Of a DNA stretch of 64,000 bases, positions 12,698 to 52,180 are shown one piece after another. The notes under the pieces were generated by a model that saw nothing but the letters and a program-made list of their open reading frames with translations, did not search any database and had not been told where the DNA came from. Position 1 is the first letter of the stretch, and each line of letters begins with the position of its first letter. Location: IMG/VR virus record IMGVR_UViG_3300023235_000008, positions 166,060 to 230,059 of that record; one strand, written 5' to 3'. Made by a program: the position numbers and the translations under genes.

Positions 12698-12725
12698 TTG
12701 ACAAACAAAATGATTGGTGTATAAT
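12698..12725 (+). promoter_or_regulatory. sigma70 promoter (leaderless transcript)
   Basis: TTGACA-16-TATAAT; ATG 7 nt downstream. Confidence 0.7.
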
Positions 12726-12731
12726 ACTCCT

Positions 12732-13445
12732 ATGATCAAGTTTACAGACATTCCAAATACAACGTTTAAAGGTTTCCGAGTATTCGGTGACGTGCATGGC
12801 GAGTTCGACGATATGGTTGAAATCGTTACAGGCGCACTTAACGAAGACTTGTTTCCGATTGGACTAGGCGACTTTACTGATCGTGGTCCAGAATCAGACA
12901 AAGTTATGGCTTATGTATTGATGATGGCACGTAACGGTTTGTTCGCCAGCATCATTGGTAACCACGACGACAAGTTGTGGCGGGCTTTGAACGGCAACAA
13001 TGTTAAAATCAACAACGGGTTGGAATTGACATTAGAGCAGTTGAACAACAACGATGACCGTGAAGGCATCGTTAATGAGTGGTTAACTGCAATGCCCAAT
13101 ATGCCATTGTTTGCTACATTTGACAAATATACTTTTGTTCACGGTTCATTTCATCCTGCGATGTTGACGGCTGACGAGTTGGCATACAAAGATAAAAAAG
13201 GATGGGGCAAAGTTGTTTCCCGTGCAATGTATGGTCAAGTTGATGGATTTCAAGAAAACGGTTACCCTAATCGTATCCACGATTGGGTTGATACTATTCC
13301 CGCTGGACATACAGTGTTCGTCGGTCACGAGGTTGTAGGCGATGTGCCAATAACCAAAACAGGTGCCTTGGGTGGCACGGCGCACTTCTTGGACACTGGT
13401 TCGGGCAAGGGCGGTTCAATCTCATTTATGGACGTGGAGTTTTAA
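12732..13445 (+). CDS. Calcineurin-like metallophosphoesterase (Pnkp phosphatase/PrpA/ApaH type)
   Basis: GDVHG, GDFTDRGP, GNHD, FVHG, VFVGH, LDTG motifs. Confidence 0.85.
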   Translation: MIKFTDIPNTTFKGFRVFGDVHGEFDDMVEIVTGALNEDLFPIGLGDFTDRGPESDKVMAYVLMMARNGLFASIIGNHDDKLWRALNGNNVKINNGLELTLEQLNNNDDREGIVNEWLTAMPNMPLFATFDKYTFVHGSFHPAMLTADELAYKDKKGWGKVVSRAMYGQVDGFQENGYPNRIHDWVDTIPAGHTVFVGHEVVGDVPITKTGALGGTAHFLDTGSGKGGSISFMDVEF

Positions 13446-14278: not shown

Positions 14279-15484
14279 ATGAAATATAACTTTCCACATA
14301 TCAATCACATCAATGATGTCCTTCCACATATCGAAGGTCGTAAAGAGTTCGTTGTGGCAGAACGAGATGGATTTACGGTTATCAACTATGTCGTAATGAC
14401 GCCTGACCTGTTCCCACCAGTTGTTACTGAAGCAGATGCAATACTGCGTGAATGTCGTGGCATCACTTTCTGCAATGAAACGGGCAAAGTCGTAGCTCGA
14501 AAGTTTCACAAGTTCTTTAACGTTGGCGAACGCATGGAAACCGAGTTCCGTAAACTGGATTTAAGTCAGCCACACGTTATTCTTGAAAAGCTTGATGGCT
14601 CAATGATTACGCCGTATCTGCGTGATGGTAAAGTTGAATGGCATACCAAAATGGGCAAGACTGATGTTGCCGATATGGTTATTCCTTTCGTTGAAGCAAA
14701 TCCACAGTATGCTGAACTGGCAGATTTCATATTGCGTAATAATAACGCTACGCCAATATTTGAGTTCTGTTCACGCAAGAATCGTGTTGTGATTGACCAT
14801 CCAGAAGACCGTATGGTATTACTGGCGGTGCGTGATAACGTAACTGGAAAGTATTGGGAATACGAGCTTGGTCTTGAAATCCCAGCTGTAGAATTTAATG
14901 TCGAGTTGGTCGGACAGCATAAAGCAACGTTTGACAAGGATTTCCTTGAATATGTTCGTGGCTTGGTCGGAACTGAAGGGTTCGTTGTGCGCTTTGATGA
15001 TGGGCATATGTTGAAAATCAAAGCAGAGGATTACTTACAGTTACATCGTGCCAAAGAAGGTATCTCTCATGAGAAGAATGTTTGGTCAATGGTCCTCAAT
15101 GAGTCAGTAGATGATTTGAAGTCATTCTTAGATGATGATGACCGTATGCGTGTTGAAGATTTTGAAGTGAAGTTATGGCGTGAAGTTGATTACGCTGTTC
15201 AGCACTTGGAAATGTTCTTCGGATTTGCAATGGATGATTTGAACAAGCGTGACCTATCAATGTTTGAAGATGCTGACCGTGAACGTAAGAAGATGTTTGC
15301 CATGGAATACGCTAATAACTACCGTAAAGAGTTCAAAGGTGTCTTGTTCAGCATGTTTGATGGTGGCGATGTGCGTGACTTGGTTATACAGTTCATTAAG
15401 AGCAACGTATCAACTGGAACTAAGTTGGATGGAATACGTCCGTTGTTTAACAACATTCAGTTTGATGAAAGGGAGTATGAATAA
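14279..15484 (+). CDS. rnl1: RNA ligase 1 (T4 Rnl1 family)
   Basis: ECRG, FHKFFNVGE, EKLDGS (motif I), TPIFE, EGFVV, LKIK. Confidence 0.9.
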   Translation: MKYNFPHINHINDVLPHIEGRKEFVVAERDGFTVINYVVMTPDLFPPVVTEADAILRECRGITFCNETGKVVARKFHKFFNVGERMETEFRKLDLSQPHVILEKLDGSMITPYLRDGKVEWHTKMGKTDVADMVIPFVEANPQYAELADFILRNNNATPIFEFCSRKNRVVIDHPEDRMVLLAVRDNVTGKYWEYELGLEIPAVEFNVELVGQHKATFDKDFLEYVRGLVGTEGFVVRFDDGHMLKIKAEDYLQLHRAKEGISHEKNVWSMVLNESVDDLKSFLDDDDRMRVEDFEVKLWREVDYAVQHLEMFFGFAMDDLNKRDLSMFEDADRERKKMFAMEYANNYRKEFKGVLFSMFDGGDVRDLVIQFIKSNVSTGTKLDGIRPLFNNIQFDEREYE

Positions 15485-15996: not shown

Positions 15997-16171
15997 AGAT
16001 CGAGTTCCTACTACTGCACCCTATGGCGGGATAACTGACGGAAGTGTCTACTGTACTCGATGTGGCGAAGAGAGAACAGGGTGCAGTATGTGTGCTGGTG
16101 AACTCAGGAGTTTGAAAGCAGGGCGATCAACCGCCTACAGATTTTGTATAGGAGATGAAAATGCTAAATAA
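15983..16171 (+). CDS. Zinc-finger-like small protein
   Basis: CTRC...CSMC. Confidence 0.5.
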   Translation: MPNNEDRVPTTAPYGGITDGSVYCTRCGEERTGCSMCAGELRSLKAGRSTAYRFCIGDENAK

Positions 16172-16595
16172 ATTGAAAGATGATGCGTTACAAGCGAGGA
16201 AAGATCGTGATCTTTTTGCTAGTTCACTCAACACGCTTTTGTCTGAAGTAAAGATGAGAGCAAAGAACGATGGCAACCGTGAGCCTAACGACGAAGATGT
16301 GTATAAGATAGCACAGACTACAATGGCTTCGTTGCTCGGTAATCGTGACCTATTGGACACTGCAGGACGTGACACGACTGAAGTAGAACAAGAGATGAAA
16401 GTGATTTCTGCTTACGTTCCTACTGTTATGCCGAAGGAAGAAGTCGAAGGTAAAGTTCAACTTGCTATGCATGAAATCAAACCAGAAGGCATGCAAGATA
16501 TGGGCAAAGTGATGTCATGGCTTAAAGAAAAGTATGGAGCTCGTATTGATATGAAACTGGCCTCTCAGCTTTTCCGGGAGCGATTGAATGGATAA
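16161..16595 (+). CDS. yqeY: YqeY/GatB C-terminal domain protein (tRNA-binding fold)
   Basis: LKDDALQARKDRD..LLSEVK..EPNDEDV..EMKVISAYVP..DMGKVM. Confidence 0.85.
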   Translation: MLNKLKDDALQARKDRDLFASSLNTLLSEVKMRAKNDGNREPNDEDVYKIAQTTMASLLGNRDLLDTAGRDTTEVEQEMKVISAYVPTVMPKEEVEGKVQLAMHEIKPEGMQDMGKVMSWLKEKYGARIDMKLASQLFRERLNG

Positions 16596-17108: not shown

Positions 17109-17567
17109 ATGCCTATGTTATATATGCTAATCGGTGTTCCAGCAAGCGGCAAGTCAACTTGGCTTGAACAAAATGCTGATAGTGGTGTAGTTTTAAGCAC
17201 GGACGCACATATTGACAATGTTGCCGCACAACAGGGCAAGTCATATAACGATGTGTTTGGCGATGCGATTAAAAAAGCCACTGTGAAAATGAATAACGAT
17301 TTAAAGCAAGCGGTTAATCGTGGCGAAGATATCCATTGGGATCAAACCAATCTTACGGTTAAATCTCGTCGTGGCAAGCTACAGAAGGTGCCTGATACGT
17401 ATGAAAAGATTGCGGTAGTATTTCCAACACCCGATGCCGACGAACATCAGCGGCGACTGGATTCACGCCCCGGCAAAACTATTCCACCACATATTTTGAA
17501 GAATATGATGGCAACTTTCCAAATGCCTACCACCGATGAAGGATTTGATAGGATAGTAGTAATATGA
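17109..17567 (+). CDS. Polynucleotide kinase-like P-loop protein (AAA_33)
   Basis: GVPASGKST, STD, WDQTN, RR, IP..I. Confidence 0.85.
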   Translation: MPMLYMLIGVPASGKSTWLEQNADSGVVLSTDAHIDNVAAQQGKSYNDVFGDAIKKATVKMNNDLKQAVNRGEDIHWDQTNLTVKSRRGKLQKVPDTYEKIAVVFPTPDADEHQRRLDSRPGKTIPPHILKNMMATFQMPTTDEGFDRIVVI

Positions 17568-19004: not shown

Positions 19005-19037
19005 AACCCTCTAAACCGCAAGTTTAGGGGGTTTTTT
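19005..19037 (+). terminator. Intrinsic terminator
   Basis: AACCCTCTAAAC-CGCA-AGTTTAGGGGG followed by a T6 run. Confidence 0.8.
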
Positions 19038-19056
19038 AATGAGCGTAAAAAAGATG

Positions 19057-19085: not shown

Positions 19086-19150
19086 ACTGAAGATAAGCAG
19101 TCAAGACCGGCGAACAACAAAGGTTGTTCAGATATATGGTAAGGCTGGCA

Positions 19151-19223
19151 CAGTAAAGAATAGCCCGTAAGGATACTAACTTTACTGCAGTAAAGAATAG
19201 CCCGTAAGGATACTAACTTTACT
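19151..19223 (+). repeat. Head-to-tail duplicated 37-nt hairpin
   Basis: CAGTAAAGAATAGCCCGTAAGGATACTAACTTTACTG twice (second copy 36/37). Confidence 0.9.
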
Positions 19224-19282
19224 AAGCAGAGGTTCGAAGCGTTTACGTGGATTGCCAATCTAAAATGTTATGTGTGTTTTGT

Positions 19283-19357
19283 CAGGGTGTAGCTCAGTCT
19301 GGCCAGAGTGTCGGTCTTGGAGTCCGAAAGTCGCAGGTTCGAGTCCTGCCACCCTGA
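19283..19357 (+). tRNA. trnP: tRNA-Pro(TGG), CCA not encoded
   Basis: CAGGGTG/CACCCTG acceptor, CT TGG AG loop, TTCGAGT T-loop. Confidence 0.9.
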
Positions 19358-19782: not shown

Positions 19783-19915
19783 GGATTGGTAGCTGAGAGG
19801 CACAGCGGCACCTTAATGGGTGTGTCGAAACATAAGCACGTAACAAACTCGCCGAGGACGCTCGAACGATAAGGTTACGCCTGTTACGTTGGTTCAAATC
19901 CAACCCAATCCACCA
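19783..19915 (+). tRNA. tRNA-Leu(TAA)-like RNA with ~60-nt extra arm
   Basis: GGATTGG/CCAATCC-A-CCA, intact D and T arms, irregular anticodon loop. Confidence 0.55.
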
Positions 19916-21655: not shown

Positions 21656-21728
21656 GTGGTCGAAGGCAAACTGGTGAGCCGACAGATTGTGGTTCTGTTG
21701 TTATTGGATTCGAGTTCCAGCGGCCACC
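21656..21728 (+). tRNA. trnH: tRNA-His(GTG), CCA not encoded
   Basis: GTGGTCG/CGGCCAC; ACAGA TTGTGGT TCTGT. Confidence 0.8.
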
Positions 21729-23468: not shown

Positions 23469-23546
23469 GGATACGAGCCAACTATTGGTTTGTTGGGGCG
23501 GCCTTTTAACCCGTGTCTATTCTCGGTTCGATTCCGAGCGTATCCT
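23469..23546 (+). tRNA. trnK: tRNA-Lys(TTT), CCA not encoded
   Basis: GGATACG/CGTATCC; CT TTT AA. Confidence 0.8.
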
Positions 23547-23547
23547 C

Positions 23548-23627
23548 GTCTGTCAATATATAGTTACCTCCACGCGGTGACGGATGGAAAAGTTCGATAT
23601 AATATCGAACCTTACTAAATACTATAT
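23548..23627 (+). ncRNA. HDV-like (theta-type) self-cleaving ribozyme 3' of tRNA-Lys
   Basis: P1 GTCTGTC/GACGGAT (G1.U), P2 ATATAGT/ACTATAT, P3 ACC/GGT, L3 TCCACGC, P1.1 GG, P4 hairpin, J4/2 CTAA. Confidence 0.8.
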
Positions 23628-24290: not shown

Positions 24291-24297
24291 AGAATAC

Positions 24298-24382
24298 GGA
24301 GGATACCGAGGTTGGCTCCTCAAACGGTCTTGAAAACCGTGGCACCGCAAGGTTGATAGTTCGATGCTATTATCCTCCGCCA
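24298..24382 (+). tRNA. trnS: tRNA-Ser(TGA)
   Basis: GGAGGAT/ATCCTCC-G-CCA; long variable arm. Confidence 0.9.
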
Positions 24383-27756: not shown

Positions 27757-27923
27757 GCGAGTGTGGTGAAATTGGTAAACACGCCAGATTTATGAGAGTC
27801 TCCGTTATAGGCTCCAATCTACAAGTTAGATTGTTTGGGGAACCGAGAAGGCTAAACCTTCAAAGTTCAAATCAGGTTCTGGTGCCGAAAGGTTTGGAGG
27901 TTCAAGTCCTCTCACTCGTACCA
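27757..27923 (+). tRNA. trnL: tRNA-Leu(TAG) with an 82-nt structured insert in the anticodon (27793-27874)
   Basis: Removing the insert restores CCAGA TT TAG GT TCTGG; the rest is a perfect Leu cloverleaf with A73-CCA. Confidence 0.85.
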
Positions 27924-29413: not shown

Positions 29414-29512
29414 GCCCCTATAGCTGAGTGGTTTAGCAAGGGTTTTGTCAAGTACATCCGAGGGTGTATTTGAAAAACCCTAGACCGGAGTTCGATTCTT
29501 CGTGGGGGCACC
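29414..29512 (+). tRNA. trnT: tRNA-Thr(TGT) with a 25-nt hairpin insert (29449-29473)
   Basis: AGGGT TT TGT [CAAGTACATC-CGAG-GGTGTATTTG-A] AA ACCCT; GCCCCTA/TGGGGGC-A-CCA. Confidence 0.85.
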
Positions 29513-29527
29513 ATTCCTAAAATATTA

Positions 29528-29596
29528 GGGGCTGCTGTATGGGACAGACTCTGCACTTGCACTGCGGATGGTGGGGATCGTTACCCCATAGCTCCA
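29528..29596 (+). tRNA. trnA: tRNA-Ala(TGC), CCA not encoded
   Basis: G3.U70 pair, A73, CT TGC AC. Confidence 0.8.
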
Positions 29597-29664
29597 GATT
29601 GATAATATTGACTACCTCCACGTGGTATCAATCGGAAACTACAGAAATGTAGGCTAAATGTCAA
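29597..29664 (+). ncRNA. HDV-like (theta-type) ribozyme starting right after the tRNA-Ala discriminator
   Basis: P1 GATTGAT/ATCAATC, P2 TTGAC/GTCAA, P3 ACC/GGT, L3 TCCACGT, GG, P4 CTACA-GAAA-TGTAG, J4/2 GCTAA. Confidence 0.85.
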
Positions 29665-29674
29665 AAAGAATAAA

Positions 29675-29830
29675 GGGTCTTTAGCTCAGTTGGTAGAGCA
29701 TCTCGCTTATGTGAGACTTCCTATAGTCTCCGGTCTATTGTTAGACCGTCATTGGTATACTGCGAAGGGAAATCTTCAAAGTTAATGAACATCGAGAATG
29801 TCGGCGGTTCAAACCCGTCAAGACCCACCA
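29675..29830 (+). tRNA. trnV: tRNA-Val(TAC) with an 80-nt structured insert in the anticodon (29710-29789)
   Basis: Removing the insert restores TCTCG CT TAC AT CGAGA; GGGTCTT/AAGACCC-A-CCA. Confidence 0.85.
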
Positions 29831-31449: not shown

Positions 31450-31568
31450 GGGTGCGTGGTGGAATTGGTATACACGCCAGACTTTTCAGTAAGGCTTTCG
31501 GAAACGAGAGTTTTACAAAAAATCTGGTGCCTTATGGATTGCGGGTTCGAGTCCCGCCGCACCCACCA
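31450..31568 (+). tRNA. trnL: tRNA-Leu(TAA) with a 34-nt hairpin insert (about 31485-31518)
   Basis: CCAGA CT T[TTCA-GTAAGGCTTTCG-GAAA-CGAGAGTTTTAC-AA]AA AA TCTGG; perfect Leu body. Confidence 0.8.
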
Positions 31569-49719: not shown

Positions 49720-50270
49720 CGGGCATAAGGCATATTTTAGGCATAAGGCATAAATGTTGCTACCTTAAAAGGTTAAGTTTGTGGAGCGCCGAAACTAAGT
49801 AGGTGAGCCTGTTGATTGGGCGGTCTGATTCGCTCTTCCTAACACACAAGCAATGCACACAATATTTTAGGAATCAATGATAGTGGCTCTGTGAAAAAGA
49901 TAACAACCACTGCCCAAAACTCACGTTGGCTAGTTACGGCGTGTGAGGGTCCGTTGTAGGAAGCTAGGGTAACGTTTCGAAGGTACAGAGCAACCGCCTT
50001 CGTCGCATGTTTTGCGAATCCCTTTTAATTAGTATGTTGTAGAACTCACAGAGAGAGCGAAAGCTTCTCGTGTTTTTTTTATACTTCTCTCCGCAAGGGG
50101 AGAAGTATGTCCAAATCTACAGAGAGTATGTGTAAAGAAAATATATTAAGCGTAAATCTTAAATCAGTATGCGAATGAAAATGAATAAGCGAAGTGAAAC
50201 GAAGCGCATTCATTGATTGAGCCGATGCCCTGTGCATCGCATTAGTATTATAATAGTTACAATATTTTAT
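49720..50270 (+). ncRNA. Large structured non-coding region (ncRNA and/or origin)
   Basis: 550 nt without an ORF; GGCATAA repeats; many GC stems and GNRA hairpins. Confidence 0.5.
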
Positions 50271-50271
50271 A

Positions 50272-51096
50272 TTATATGTTTGGATATTTTACGTCTTTTG
50301 CATCAGCTGCGTGGAATAATGGCCACATATCTTTACTTGATGGACCAGTTTGCCATTTTCCATCCTTTGTCTTTTTAGACCACATCTGACCTTCCCACTT
50401 GAAGATATTACCATTATGAGATAATAAAGTTCCTTTAGGGATTTCACGTGGTCTAGAAGGTTTAGGTGTTTCTTCTGGTTGTGCGTTAGGTGTTTCTTCT
50501 GATTGTGCATTATATTTTGCGTTGAGATATTCTTCAGCTTTCTTTGCAATATAAGCCTTCATGCCATCAATATTCTCAACTTCATTATCAAAGTCTCCGA
50601 TGCCTACGCCTTTAACTCCACCAATAATGCCATTCATAAAGTTCTTGAAAATTTCAAGTGTTTTAGAATCCTCTACTGCTTCATCTTTCGTGGCATTGAC
50701 ATAGTAATCTTCCCATTTCTTAGCAAATAATCTTGCAAGTTTAGGCGCATCTTTCTTGATGTTCTTCTTGCGTGTTCTGAATTCATCCGCAGAAAGATTA
50801 TTATTGGTACTTTGTTGTGGGGTGGTATCAGTTTGTTGTTGCGGAAAGAAACGTCTGAATTCGCTACTTGTTCCATCCATTCGCTGCAATAAATCGGTAT
50901 ATTCATTACCAGCTGCGGTCATTAACTTGACTAATATAGCTGTGTCGGATGATCCAAGGTTACCAAAAGCAGATTGTTTAAGTAGTGCATATGCTTTTTT
51001 AGAGCCTTTACCACCATTGCCAAGCTTATTGATAAGCTTTTCATCATCGGGTTTCGGTCCAGTTCCTGCTTCGAATATTAATTCACGATATTTCAT
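50272..51096 (-). CDS. Late hypothetical (virion-type) protein
   Basis: MKYRELIFEA start typical of phage head proteins; upstream ATAAATA. Confidence 0.65.
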   Translation of the reverse strand: MKYRELIFEAGTGPKPDDEKLINKLGNGGKGSKKAYALLKQSAFGNLGSSDTAILVKLMTAAGNEYTDLLQRMDGTSSEFRRFFPQQQTDTTPQQSTNNNLSADEFRTRKKNIKKDAPKLARLFAKKWEDYYVNATKDEAVEDSKTLEIFKNFMNGIIGGVKGVGIGDFDNEVENIDGMKAYIAKKAEEYLNAKYNAQSEETPNAQPEETPKPSRPREIPKGTLLSHNGNIFKWEGQMWSKKTKDGKWQTGPSSKDMWPLFHAADAKDVKYPNI

Positions 51097-51107
51097 ATAC
51101 GTATTTA

Positions 51108-51340
51108 TTAAATAAACGGCATTTGTGTTTCTTTGGTTGCTTCCATATTCGATTGAATGATTTCAGAAATTAATGCACGATCCTTCGGCGGCATAATATA
51201 TACCTCATTAAGCGTGACACCGCCACGCATCCACCAGCATATTGTCAGGAGTTCTTTTCGTAAGGCTTCCACATTTTTATCGTAACTGTCTAGTAACTTT
51301 ACGATATCCTGATTATTGAGCGATAGAAGCCTTACCCGAA
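51108..51340 (-). CDS. -1 frame extension of the upstream chaperone gene (gpT-like)
   Basis: RVRLLSLNNQDIVKLL..ICWWMRGGVTLNE..ETQMPFI; no ATG/RBS at its head; entered through T TTT TTC. Confidence 0.65.
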
Positions 51341-52180
51341 AAAATTTGATGCCTCGAATTCAAGCGGTGCAGTATATTCGTGCTTACAATCCATACAAGT
51401 TAGATTTAATGGGTTTAACTCCATTTGTTTGCGGAACACCGTAAGAATATTTTCAATCATTTCATATGAACGCTTATCCGTATTAGTTACGAATTCAAAT
51501 ATATGTTTACGATCAATAACTTCAGTTCCATCAGGCATTACAATCTTATCAATGAAATTGCTCGTGATATCCATGGATAAGTTACTAATATTACTAAGAT
51601 AATCAGCATAAAGTTTATTTTTACGCTCATCATCCATTGTATTATCTGGATTATCGAGCAATGTCAATAAACGCTGTTCTTCGAACGTCTGCATACTGAC
51701 TTTATTAAGCTGACTAAACATCTGCGGTTTGAAATATATTTTCAAATCTTTGACCATATGCGGTTCTGAGAAATCGATGTGTCTTTTTTGATCAAGCATG
51801 ATGCGTAAATCGATTGCAAACTTATTTTCTTCTTTGCAGCTAGGGCAAATACTAGTGAAATCCATTTCTTCGCCATACGTGGCAATACGGATAGCAATAA
51901 GGATAGAATCGATGTCGGTAGTAGGCACACCCGCAGCATCTTTGATTTGCGGAATGCAACTTTGAATAACTTGTCTTGTTGCTGATCCATTCATAAGTGA
52001 ATCGGGCGTGTTTAGCGCAATTTCATCCCGTGCTGTCATAGGCATAACCGCGACTTCGGTTGAACCTTCCTCCAATTCAAGTGCACCGGGCGAATAATGC
52101 TCGCCTTTCGACGGCAAGTCTAAAAAAAGTGCTGGTGTTCGAAAATGTCCAGAAAGTGGGTTAGTATTAGGGGTTTCCAT
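51332..52180 (-). CDS. gp26: Baseplate hub/tail assembly chaperone (T4 gp26/gp51-like)
   Basis: NPLSGHFR.P...MTARDE..PD.LMNG..AIRIATYG, CxxC twice. Confidence 0.75.
   Translation of the reverse strand: METPNTNPLSGHFRTPALFLDLPSKGEHYSPGALELEEGSTEVAVMPMTARDEIALNTPDSLMNGSATRQVIQSCIPQIKDAAGVPTTDIDSILIAIRIATYGEEMDFTSICPSCKEENKFAIDLRIMLDQKRHIDFSEPHMVKDLKIYFKPQMFSQLNKVSMQTFEEQRLLTLLDNPDNTMDDERKNKLYADYLSNISNLSMDITSNFIDKIVMPDGTEVIDRKHIFEFVTNTDKRSYEMIENILTVFRKQMELNPLNLTCMDCKHEYTAPLEFEASNFFG

What the first reader, a model, noticed from the sequence alone, without database searches (positions are those of the whole stretch)
29597..29664. Second theta ribozyme cutting exactly at the tRNA-Ala discriminator
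Seen: G1 immediately follows A73 and all HDV helices are present. It shares ACCTCCACG(T/C)GGT with the Lys ribozyme but has unrelated P1/P2/P4 sequences, which is natural covariation.
Basis: partly seen in the sequence, partly recalled or inferred. Interest (0 to 1): 0.7.

Follow-up and report, generated by a model that had tools for sequence, protein, structure and literature searches.

The report
tRNA-Ala 3'-end self-cleaving HDV-like ribozyme
Directly after a phage alanine tRNA gene that lacks its CCA tail lies a small HDV-like self-cutting RNA that most likely trims the tRNA to its exact 3' end; this is a known trick of gut phages, seen here in a bulkier form in a salt-lake giant phage.

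Summary
Window 29597-29664 (+) has every element of an HDV-like ribozyme: 7-bp P1, 5-bp P2, 3-bp P3, P1.1 (GG with CC), a 5-bp P4 with a GAAA loop, and the catalytic C at 29654. G29597 directly follows A29596, the discriminator of a CCA-less tRNA-Ala(UGC).

Two models support it. Rfam RF02682 scores 41.5 bits (E 6e-5, just under its cut-off of 44). A covariance model built only from eight unrelated phage ribozymes scores 48 bits (E 7e-7) and starts exactly at 29597. The tRNA-Lys element shares the 13-nt core, while its P1, P2 and P4 differ in a compensatory way.

It is not a strict theta ribozyme. Theta ribozymes are defined as minimal and P4-less, with 5-8 nt in L4; this element has 18 nt there, forming a real P4. 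It belongs to a P4-bearing, tRNA-linked subgroup that I also found in IMG/VR phages.

The source is a roughly 65%-complete jumbo phage from a salt lake, and it probably uses the standard genetic code. About 23 of 27 tRNAs in the array encode CCA, but the two with ribozymes do not. The phage also encodes a CCA-adding enzyme and a Pnkp-like 2',3'-phosphatase.

Cleavage itself is untested, because no RNA data were available. Verdict: a new variant of a known kind, of moderate interest.

The parts
29528..29596 (+). tRNA-Ala(UGC) without encoded CCA. It has G3:U70 and discriminator A73 = A29596, plus an unusual T-loop (ATCGTTA) and a short D-loop.
   Evidence: Read directly from the sequence. The MFE fold gives a cloverleaf with A73 unpaired. 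ARAGORN calls Ala(tgc) in a frame shifted by 3. The Rfam tRNA model misses it. A related tRNA-Ala on another contig stops matching at 29596 and continues with CCA.
29597..29664 (+). The whole HDV-like ribozyme. The predicted scissile bond lies between A29596 and G29597.
   Evidence: RF02682: 41.5 bits, E 6e-5. Independent model R1: 48 bits, E 7.4e-7, with model position 1 at 29597. Also found by my descriptor scan.
29597..29603 (+). P1 5' strand, GATTGAT. G29597 is the +1 nucleotide.
   Evidence: Forms 7 Watson-Crick pairs with 29627-29633. All 7 P1 pairs covary across 26 relatives.
29608..29612 (+). P2 5' strand, TTGAC. It is preceded by J1/2 (29604-07) and followed by the bulged T29613.
   Evidence: Complementary to 29660-29664. 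Relatives have the same one-nucleotide bulge before P3.
29614..29626 (+). P3 (ACC/GGT) enclosing L3 (TCCACGT). CC 29618-19 forms P1.1.
   Evidence: Identical to the published theta core |ACC|T|CC|ACGT|GGT|.
29627..29635 (+). P1 3' strand ATCAATC (29627-33), followed by the GG of P1.1 (29634-35).
   Evidence: C29633, which pairs with G29597, lies immediately 5' of the P1.1 GG; this is what fixes +1 at 29597.
29639..29652 (+). P4 hairpin: CTACA, GAAA loop, TGTAG. This is the feature that minimal theta ribozymes lack.
   Evidence: Present in both the MFE and the centroid fold. The base pairs of P4 covary in relatives.
29654..29659 (+). J4/2, CTAAAT. C29654 is the predicted catalytic cytosine.
   Evidence: It aligns to the conserved GGCUAA of RF02682 and of model R1. 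Published theta ribozymes have C-T/C/A-A/G-A at this position.
29660..29664 (+). P2 3' strand, GTCAA.
29665..29674 (+). A 10-nt A-rich spacer before the next tRNA gene (29675-29830).
23469..23547 (+). tRNA-Lys(UUU) without encoded CCA. The discriminator is T23546, followed by C23547.
23548..23627 (+). Sister HDV-like ribozyme after tRNA-Lys. It has the same core, different P1/P2, and an 8-bp P4. It is predicted to cut after C23547, one nucleotide past the discriminator.
   Evidence: Model R1: 31.6 bits, E 7e-4. drz-agam-1: 28.9 bits, E 0.022. Also found by my descriptor scan.
12714..13445 (+). Metallophosphoesterase (243 aa). It is a candidate enzyme for removing the 2',3'-cyclic phosphate left on the cut tRNA. 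This role is inferred.
   Evidence: PF00149, E 7e-12. The best solved relative is 4j6o (E 5.6e-17), the 2',3' phosphatase module of bacterial Pnkp.
14279..15484 (+). T4 Rnl1-type RNA ligase (401 aa). It is part of the RNA end-healing and sealing gene set next to the tRNA array.
   Evidence: PF09511, E 4.5e-29. phrog_562, E 3.5e-73.
17109..17567 (+). P-loop protein resembling a polynucleotide kinase (152 aa, kinase domain only).
   Evidence: PF13671, E 4e-17. phrog_505 polynucleotide kinase, E 1e-10.

Best explanation
Window 29597-29664 encodes an HDV-like self-cleaving ribozyme fused to the 3' end of a CCA-less phage tRNA-Ala(UGC).

Proposed pathway:
1. The tRNA array is transcribed as a long precursor.
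2. The ribozyme folds into the nested double pseudoknot (P1, P1.1, P2, P3, P4).
3. With C29654 and a bound Mg2+ doing the catalysis, the 2'-OH of A29596 attacks the A29596-G29597 phosphodiester bond.
4. This releases tRNA-Ala ending exactly at discriminator A73 with a 2',3'-cyclic phosphate. The ribozyme keeps a 5'-OH and stays attached to the spacer and the next tRNA precursor, until RNase P cuts at 29674/29675.
5. The cyclic phosphate is then removed. The phage's own Pnkp-like 2',3' phosphatase (12714-13445) is the best candidate.
6. CCA is added by the phage-encoded CCA-adding enzyme (G000 50077-51405) or the host's enzyme, and the tRNA is charged through G3:U70.

The ribozyme thus substitutes for RNase Z or exonuclease trimming at the two tRNAs in the array that lack an encoded CCA.

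What is shown: the fold, the conserved catalytic nucleotides, family membership by two models, the junction position, the lack of CCA, and the presence of the accessory genes. What is inferred: cleavage itself, the order of the steps, and which enzymes act.
For: - All helices and core nucleotides are present. The MFE fold of tRNA plus ribozyme keeps the cloverleaf and P1/P3/P4 as separate domains, with A73 unpaired.
- RF02682 scores 41.5 bits, E 6e-5. Model R1, built from 8 IMG/VR phage ribozymes with no window sequence, scores 48 bits, E 7.4e-7, and starts at 29597.
- In 26 aligned relatives, 99.7% of cells are paired and all 7 P1 pairs show double compensatory changes. The covariation score is 0.714, against 0.199 for shuffles (0 of 500 reach it) and at most 0.139 when partners are slid.
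- At least 15 of 25 unique P4-bearing relatives sit directly after a T-arm, a 7-nt acceptor strand and a discriminator.
- Theta ribozymes with the identical core cleave tRNA 3' trailers in vitro, and only 4.5% of their tRNAs encode CCA (PMC10879173).
- In this array, 23 of 27 tRNAs encode CCA. Both ribozyme-linked tRNAs are among the 4 that do not (Fisher p = 0.017).
- A phage CCA-adding-type nucleotidyltransferase is present: PF01743 E 2e-33, NF009814 E 6e-62.
- A Pnkp-type 2',3' phosphatase homologue, an Rnl1 ligase and a kinase lie next to the array.
- No ORF of 50 aa or more overlaps the element.
Against: - No RNA data exist: no RNA run was listed, so cleavage is not observed.
- The RF02682 score is 2.5 bits under Rfam's gathering threshold.
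- P2 is only 5 bp.
- No diverged ortholog of this particular locus was found. Covariation therefore comes from the wider subgroup and from the Lys paralogue, and that subgroup was partly selected for P1 pairing.
- The tRNA is atypical: Rfam's tRNA model misses it, and it has an odd T-loop.
- The phage CCA enzyme lacks an HD phosphohydrolase domain.
- The assignment of the phosphatase to this step is a guess from homology. Metallophosphoesterases are common in phages, and co-occurrence in relatives was inconclusive.
Confidence: 0.8

Rival explanations
1. The ribozyme is active, but its role is regulatory rather than simple maturation. The 2',3'-cyclic phosphate left on A73 blocks CCA addition, so tRNA-Ala(UGC) and tRNA-Lys(UUU) stay inert until the phage phosphatase and CCA enzyme are expressed. 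That would time the supply of these two tRNAs during infection.
For: - Only two of about 27 tRNAs carry the ribozyme, and both lack CCA.
- The phage carries its own phosphatase, kinase, ligase and CCA enzyme.
- The theta paper also leaves 'maturation and/or regulation' open.
Against: There are no expression data. The same facts fit constitutive maturation. Nothing in the sequence suggests a switch, such as an aptamer or an alternative helix.
Confidence: 0.1
2. The ribozyme mainly serves the downstream RNA. It would create a 5'-OH end that separates transcripts or stabilises the following intron-bearing tRNA precursor. In that case its position at the tRNA-Ala end is only a convenient insertion point.
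For: HDV-like ribozymes act as 5'-end processors in retrotransposon RNAs (own knowledge). In both cases here the ribozyme is followed within about 4-10 nt by another tRNA.
Against: - RNase P already defines the downstream tRNA's 5' end.
- Cleavage falls exactly at N73 (Ala) or N73+1 (Lys), and the same holds in at least 15 relatives.
- The link with missing CCA points to the upstream tRNA.
Confidence: 0.05
3. It is an inactive relic or a chance look-alike, with no cleavage.
For: It scores just below the Rfam gathering score. P2 is short. No direct cleavage evidence exists.
Against: - Every catalytic-core nucleotide matches the experimentally active theta consensus.
- Two independent models give E-values of 1e-4 or better.
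- Chance pattern matches never show the fold.
- The sequence is identical in several lake samples and in two assemblies.
Confidence: 0.05

Closest known systems
Theta ribozymes (tRNA-associated minimal HDV-like ribozymes of gut phages; Kienbeck et al. 2024, PMC10879173)
   Same: - The catalytic core is identical: ACC-T-CC-ACGT-GGT, the P1.1 GG, and J4/2 C-T-A-A.
- P1 is 7 bp and starts with G.
- The cleavage site is at the tRNA 3' end.
- The tRNA lacks CCA.
- The phage encodes a CCA-adding enzyme.

   Different: - It has a real P4 domain: 18 nt between P1.1 and the catalytic C, against 5-8 nt in theta ribozymes.
- J1/2 is 4 nt, P2 is 5 bp, and there is a bulged nucleotide before P3.
- The source is a salt-lake jumbo phage, not a gut phage.
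- The phage probably uses the standard code and has no suppressor tRNA.
- It carries an Rnl1-type ligase rather than a DRB0094-type ligase.
Rfam RF02682, HDV-F-prausnitzii (drz-Fpra type bacterial/phage HDV-like ribozyme with short P4)
   Same: The overall architecture matches, including a short P4 and the GGCUAA J4/2. It is the best Rfam match: 41.5 bits, full model length 1-74.
   Different: The score is below the 44-bit gathering cut-off. Of the 12 full-fold examples with the same core pattern that I found in bacterial MAG contigs, 11 are not next to tRNAs. This element is.
RNase Z / tRNA 3'-trailer endonucleolytic processing of CCA-less tRNAs
   Same: The outcome is the same: a cut right after the discriminator that prepares the tRNA for CCA addition (established knowledge).
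   Different: This is RNA catalysis acting in cis. It leaves a 2',3'-cyclic phosphate instead of a 3'-OH, so an extra healing step is needed.
Bacterial Pnkp RNA repair enzyme (kinase, 2',3' phosphatase and ligase; PMC3675462)
   Same: The phage has homologues of all three modules. Each hits a separate part of phrog_8238, and the phosphatase's best solved relative is 4j6o.
   Different: The modules are encoded as three separate genes. Any role in healing ribozyme-cut tRNA ends is my inference and has not been shown.

Membership tests
HDV-like ribozymes (drz) in general | Nested double pseudoknot: P1, P1.1, P2, P3 (with or without P4) in the canonical order | tested here: met
   All helices can be drawn at 29597-29664. 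P1, P3 and P4 also appear in the MFE fold. Both covariance models align over their full length.
HDV-like ribozymes (drz) in general | Catalytic cytosine at the start of J4/2, plus the conserved L3 U...G and P1.1 C-G pairs | tested here: met
   C29654, L3 TCCACGT, and CC 29618-19 with GG 29634-35, compared with the published sequences.
HDV-like ribozymes (drz) in general | Helices supported by compensatory changes among relatives | tested here: met
   7 of 7 P1 pairs, 1 P3 pair and 2 P4 pairs show double changes, and 0 of 500 shuffles reach the observed score. Caveat: the set was partly selected for pairing. The Ala and Lys elements differ in P1 by 4 double changes.
HDV-like ribozymes (drz) in general | Mg2+-dependent self-scission 5' of +1, abolished by mutating the catalytic C to U | not testable with these tools
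   No RNA run was listed. An in vitro assay is needed.
Theta ribozyme sensu Kienbeck et al. 2024 | Minimal: no P4 domain, and a short L4 (5-8 nt in the 131 published sequences read) | tested here: not met
   There are 18 nt between the GG and the catalytic C, forming a 5-bp stem with a GAAA loop.
Theta ribozyme sensu Kienbeck et al. 2024 | Conserved core letters of the refined motif (P3 RCC/GGY, T, NC, NCGY, GN, C+3-4 nt) | tested here: met
   ACC|T|CC|ACGT|GGT ... GG ... CTAA matches the most frequent published theta sequence letter for letter.
Theta ribozyme sensu Kienbeck et al. 2024 | J1/2 of 1-3 nt and a 7-nt P2 (as seen in the published hits) | tested here: inconclusive
   The natural parse gives J1/2 of 4 nt, P2 of 5 bp and a 1-nt bulge. 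Forced into 3+7, P2 has 2 mismatches. The mismatch tolerance of the descriptor is in a figure I could not read.
Theta ribozyme sensu Kienbeck et al. 2024 | tRNA-associated: cleavage site within +/-5 nt (77% within +/-1) of a tRNA 3' end | tested here: met
   The offset from A73 is 0 nt.
Rfam RF02682 HDV-F-prausnitzii | Score at or above the curated gathering threshold (44 bits) | tested here: not met
   41.5 bits, with E 6e-5 over 13 kb and 9e-7 over 201 nt. It is absent from the gathering-threshold scan.
tRNA-Ala | Cloverleaf with anticodon UGC, the G3:U70 identity pair and A73 | tested here: met
   Read from the sequence and the MFE fold. ARAGORN calls Ala(tgc). However, the Rfam tRNA model gives no hit at E of 10 or below, so the tRNA is atypical.

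The most novel reading that the evidence does not exclude
P4-bearing, theta-like ribozymes form a distinct class that the published minimal-motif search overlooked, and they are widespread in non-gut phages. In this jumbo phage they would be the first step of a phage-autonomous tRNA 3'-end pathway: the ribozyme cuts, a split Pnkp-type 2',3' phosphatase heals the end, and a phage CCA-adding enzyme finishes it. The pathway would serve specifically the tRNAs that lack an encoded CCA, making their maturation independent of host RNase Z and exonucleases.
Probability: 0.35. Interest if true: 0.55.

Novelty: new variant of a known kind. Interest (0 to 1): 0.4.

Why it matters
The theta paper describes tRNA 3'-end processing by a cis-acting HDV-like ribozyme as currently limited to minimal, P4-less ribozymes of mammalian-gut phages, and links it largely to stop-codon recoding. 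This case extends that picture in four ways.

- The same core, carrying a P4 domain, does the same job in a salt-lake jumbo phage that probably uses the standard code, on sense tRNAs (Ala and Lys).
- Similar P4-bearing, tRNA-linked ribozymes exist in other IMG/VR phages, so motif searches restricted to minimal forms undercount the phenomenon.
- Within this array the ribozymes sit only on CCA-less tRNAs. This gives a clean internal contrast that supports a role replacing RNase Z.
- The 2',3'-cyclic phosphate left on the tRNA is not discussed in the theta paper. Here a Pnkp-type phosphatase, an Rnl1 ligase, a kinase and a CCA-adding enzyme are all encoded by the phage, so the complete maturation route can be tested with defined parts.

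Tried and rejected
- **Exact ortholog search in viral contigs** with a 22-mer: 0 hits.
- **Relatives of the neighbouring 376-aa ORF:** none.
- **megablast and blastn against cultured phages:** only tRNA-level matches, or nothing.
- **Metagenome scan with tRNA-Ala end plus core (TAGCTCCAG..ACCTCCACG):** 116 loci, but only the phage's own genome and one identical contig have the fold. The rest are chance matches, mostly in GC-rich DNA. This was useful as a negative control and useless for ortholog covariation.
- **RNA runs:** none listed.
- **DNA contigs from four lake samples:** no variants inside the ribozyme, so there is no population-level covariation.
- **Plain MAFFT alignments of the ribozymes:** these misplace P1 and P4. 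I replaced them with a model-guided alignment. P2 could not be scored on that alignment because it is not part of the nested model.
- **A third R1 hit at 19112-19161 (E 0.42):** it is only a hairpin lacking P3/L3, so I rejected it.
- **The other descriptor hits in the genome:** these were at shuffle level and lack the core.
- **Other RNA-repair enzymes:** DRB0094-type ligase, Rnl2-type ligase and RtcB are not found.
- **Recoding:** a crude stop-to-stop ORF coverage comparison gave no sign that TAG or TGA is reassigned, and there is no suppressor tRNA. The tRNA-Sec-like hit at 24297 is a tRNA-Ser(UGA).
- **Co-occurrence of the CCA enzyme and phosphatase in five related phage records:** inconclusive, because most records are 10-38% complete.
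- **The theta descriptor file:** it is held only as an image, so I inferred its limits from the published hit lists. Those lists were truncated in storage.

Full report
**1. The observation**

The sequence at 29597-29664 (+) can be drawn as a complete HDV-like ribozyme:
- P1: GATTGAT (29597-603) with ATCAATC (29627-33).
- J1/2: AATA.
- P2: TTGAC (29608-12) with GTCAA (29660-64).
- A bulged T at 29613.
- P3: ACC with GGT, enclosing L3 TCCACGT.
- P1.1: GG 29634-35 with CC 29618-19.
- AAA, then P4: CTACA-GAAA-TGTAG (29639-52), then G.
- J4/2: CTAAAT, whose first base, C29654, is the predicted catalytic cytosine.

P1, P3 and P4 also appear in the thermodynamic fold. P2 and P1.1 are pseudoknots that the folding program cannot draw.

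**2. The tRNA boundary**

Upstream, GGGGCTG (29528-34) pairs with TAGCTCC (29589-95), including the alanine identity pair G3:U70. A29596 is therefore the discriminator, and G29597 follows it directly.

- ARAGORN reports 29525-29599, but that frame is shifted by 3 and has a mismatched stem and a poor T-arm.
- Rfam's tRNA model misses this tRNA entirely. It has an odd T-loop (ATCGTTA) and a short D-loop.
- Folding 29528-29674 as one RNA gives a cloverleaf, an unpaired A73, and then the ribozyme helices as a separate domain.
- A more abundant contig in the same lake samples carries a related tRNA-Ala. It matches 29520-29596 with 10 differences and continues with CCA right after the position equivalent to 29596. 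This is independent support for the boundary.

**3. Is it more than chance?**

- Rfam's RF02682 (HDV ribozyme of F. prausnitzii) matches 29598-29665 over the full model at 41.5 bits. That is 2.5 bits under its gathering score, with E 6e-5 for 13 kb against all families.
- The RF02682 alignment starts one base late because that model has an extra A between P1 and P1.1. Here C29633 abuts the P1.1 GG and pairs with G29597, which fixes +1 at 29597.
- I built a covariance model (R1) from eight IMG/VR phage ribozymes that share only the core pattern, with no window sequence. It hits 29597-29666 at 48 bits, E 7.4e-7, with model position 1 on G29597. It hits the tRNA-Lys element at 31.6 bits, E 7e-4, and nothing else credible in the window.
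- A loose descriptor scan of the whole 230-kb genome finds only these two convincing elements. Shuffled genomes give 0-2 hits per strand and the real genome three further weak hits, none with the conserved core.
- A deliberately loose metagenome pattern (tRNA end plus 9-nt core) returned 116 loci. Only the phage's own genome and one identical contig had the fold.

**4. Relation to the Lys element**

The 13-mer ACCTCCACG(T/C)GGT occurs exactly twice in the genome.

The Lys ribozyme (23548-23627) has P1 GTCTGTC/GACGGAT, P2 ATATAGT/ACTATAT and an 8-bp P4. Compared with the Ala element, four P1 pairs change on both sides and two change to G-U. P2 and P4 are unrelated in sequence but still paired.

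One difference: the Lys ribozyme's +1 G follows C23547, one nucleotide past discriminator T23546, so that cut would keep the first C of CCA.

**5. Relatives**

Two IMG/VR scans with the core followed by GGAAA gave 128 pattern hits. Of these, 29 (25 unique) have the full fold. By chance, a 7-bp P1 is expected in about 2% of hits.

These relatives share an arrangement that this element also has: GG, AAA, a P4 that opens with C and closes with G, then G, then the catalytic C. Many also have a one-nucleotide bulge between P2 and P3.

On a model-guided alignment of 26 such ribozymes:
- 99.7% of cells are paired.
- All 7 P1 pairs, one P3 pair and two P4 pairs show double compensatory changes.
- The covariation score is 0.714, against 0.199 for shuffles (0 of 500 reach it) and at most 0.139 when partners are slid.

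The caveat is that the set was partly selected for P1 pairing and was aligned to the structure.

At least 15 of the 25 unique relatives lie directly after a T-arm, a 7-nt acceptor strand and a discriminator. Several of those tRNAs have CUA (amber suppressor) anticodons.

In bacterial MAG contigs, 12 of 63 pattern hits have the full fold, and only one of these 12 is next to a tRNA.

**6. Comparison with the known family**

Kienbeck et al. 2024 (PMC10879173) define theta ribozymes as a subgroup of minimal HDV-like ribozymes, and state that minimal ones lack the P4 domain. Theta ribozymes were found with a motif whose L4 loop and J1/2 had been shortened.

[quoted passage not shown] In the 131 unique sequences I read, L4 is 5-8 nt, J1/2 is 1-3 nt and P2 is 7 nt.

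This element has the identical core. However, it has 18 nt with a real hairpin in place of L4, a 4-nt J1/2 and a 5-bp P2. It therefore fails the 'minimal' criterion and would not be found by that descriptor. The held parts of the paper's supplementary lists contain none of the three GG-AAAC octamers I searched for (GGAAACAG, GGAAACGG, GGAAACTA), though those files were truncated in storage.

Functionally it matches. In the paper, 77% of tRNA-associated theta ribozymes cut within 1 nt of the tRNA end, only 4.5% of those tRNAs encode CCA, CCA-adding enzymes are enriched 250-fold in theta-carrying phages, and four tRNA/theta pairs cleaved in vitro in a C-dependent manner.

No later paper in the held library describes P4-bearing or non-gut tRNA-linked HDV-like ribozymes.

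**7. Context**

- The window is the last 64 kb of a 230,059-bp IMG/VR virus record estimated at 65% complete, so this is a jumbo phage.
- It was assembled from salt-lake metagenomes. GC content is 40%. A crude stop-to-stop ORF comparison gave no sign that TAG or TGA is reassigned, and there is no suppressor tRNA.
- The array at 19.2-31.6 kb holds about 28 tRNA genes, all on the + strand.
- Of 27 with clear ends, 23 are followed by CCA. The four that are not are Pro, an unidentified tRNA at 21656, and the two ribozyme-linked tRNAs. Fisher p = 0.017.
- The phage encodes a 442-aa CCA-adding-type nucleotidyltransferase without an HD domain.
- Just upstream of the array lie four relevant genes:
  - a T4 Rnl1-type RNA ligase;
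  - a YqeY-like protein;
  - a polynucleotide-kinase-like protein.
- No ORF of 50 aa or more overlaps the ribozyme. No strong + strand promoter or terminator separates it from its flanking tRNAs.

**8. Mechanism**

Shown:
- the fold and the conserved catalytic nucleotides;
- the position of +1;
- the lack of CCA;
- the presence of the accessory genes.

Inferred from established HDV ribozyme chemistry and the theta precedent:
- The ribozyme cleaves co-transcriptionally between A29596 and G29597.
- This leaves tRNA-Ala with an A73 2',3'-cyclic phosphate and a 5'-OH on the ribozyme.
- The phosphate is removed, with the phage's Pnkp-like phosphatase as the best candidate.
- CCA is then added by the phage or host enzyme.
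- RNase P frees the next tRNA.

I put about 0.8 on this reading. Most of the remainder goes to a regulatory version of the same chemistry.

**9. Verdict**

This is a P4-bearing, theta-like, tRNA 3'-end ribozyme in a non-gut jumbo phage: a new variant of a known kind, of moderate interest.

Noticed in passing
window 27757-27923 and 29675-29830 (also 19783-19915, 29414-29513, 31450-31568): Several tRNA genes carry insertions next to the anticodon. Two genes that ARAGORN calls Ile(UAU), with introns of 82 and 80 nt, have diverged exons. Their insertions are homologous and fold into the same three hairpins with compensatory changes. The insertions are too small for group I introns. The nearby Rnl1 ligase, kinase and phosphatase genes raise the possibility of protein-dependent tRNA splicing.
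   Followed up: partly
window 12714-13445, 14279-15484, 16155-16595, 17109-17567: An RNA end-healing and sealing gene set lies just upstream of the tRNA array. It comprises a Pnkp-type 2',3' phosphatase homologue (best PDB hit 4j6o), a T4 Rnl1-type RNA ligase, a YqeY/GatB-like protein and a polynucleotide-kinase-like protein. The phosphatase, ligase and kinase each match a separate part of one 737-aa phage family (phrog_8238), so this looks like a split Pnkp.
   Followed up: partly
window 23546-23548: The tRNA-Lys ribozyme's +1 G follows C23547, one nucleotide after discriminator T23546. Cleavage there would keep the first C of CCA, unlike the exact-discriminator cut at tRNA-Ala.
   Followed up: partly
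window 29520-29596 versus a 972-nt contig in lake runs X5/X8: A more abundant genome in the same lake carries a related tRNA-Ala (10 differences) that is followed by an encoded CCA and has no ribozyme. The same tRNA lineage therefore exists in both forms, with CCA encoded and with a ribozyme instead.
   Followed up: no
window 19153-19224: A direct repeat of about 34 nt occurs twice in tandem. It lies between a promoter-like site (around 19059) and the first tRNA of the array (tRNA-Pro, 19283). Just upstream, at 19009-19038, is an intrinsic-terminator-like hairpin.
   Followed up: no
window 24297-24379: A long-arm tRNA scores 41 bits on the tRNA-Sec model, but its anticodon loop reads CUUGAAA. 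It is therefore a tRNA-Ser(UGA), not a suppressor. ARAGORN misses it.
   Followed up: yes
window 19283-19357 and 21656-21728: Two further tRNAs lack an encoded CCA (they are followed by CAG and CCT) and have no ribozyme. They presumably rely on another 3'-end route.
   Followed up: no
L099:3902-3969, L102:3410-3477, L111:5503-5570 (IMG/VR loci): In other phages, P4-bearing ribozymes of the same subgroup directly follow tRNAs with CUA (amber suppressor) anticodons, some of which carry insertions. This mirrors the suppressor link reported for minimal theta ribozymes.
   Followed up: partly
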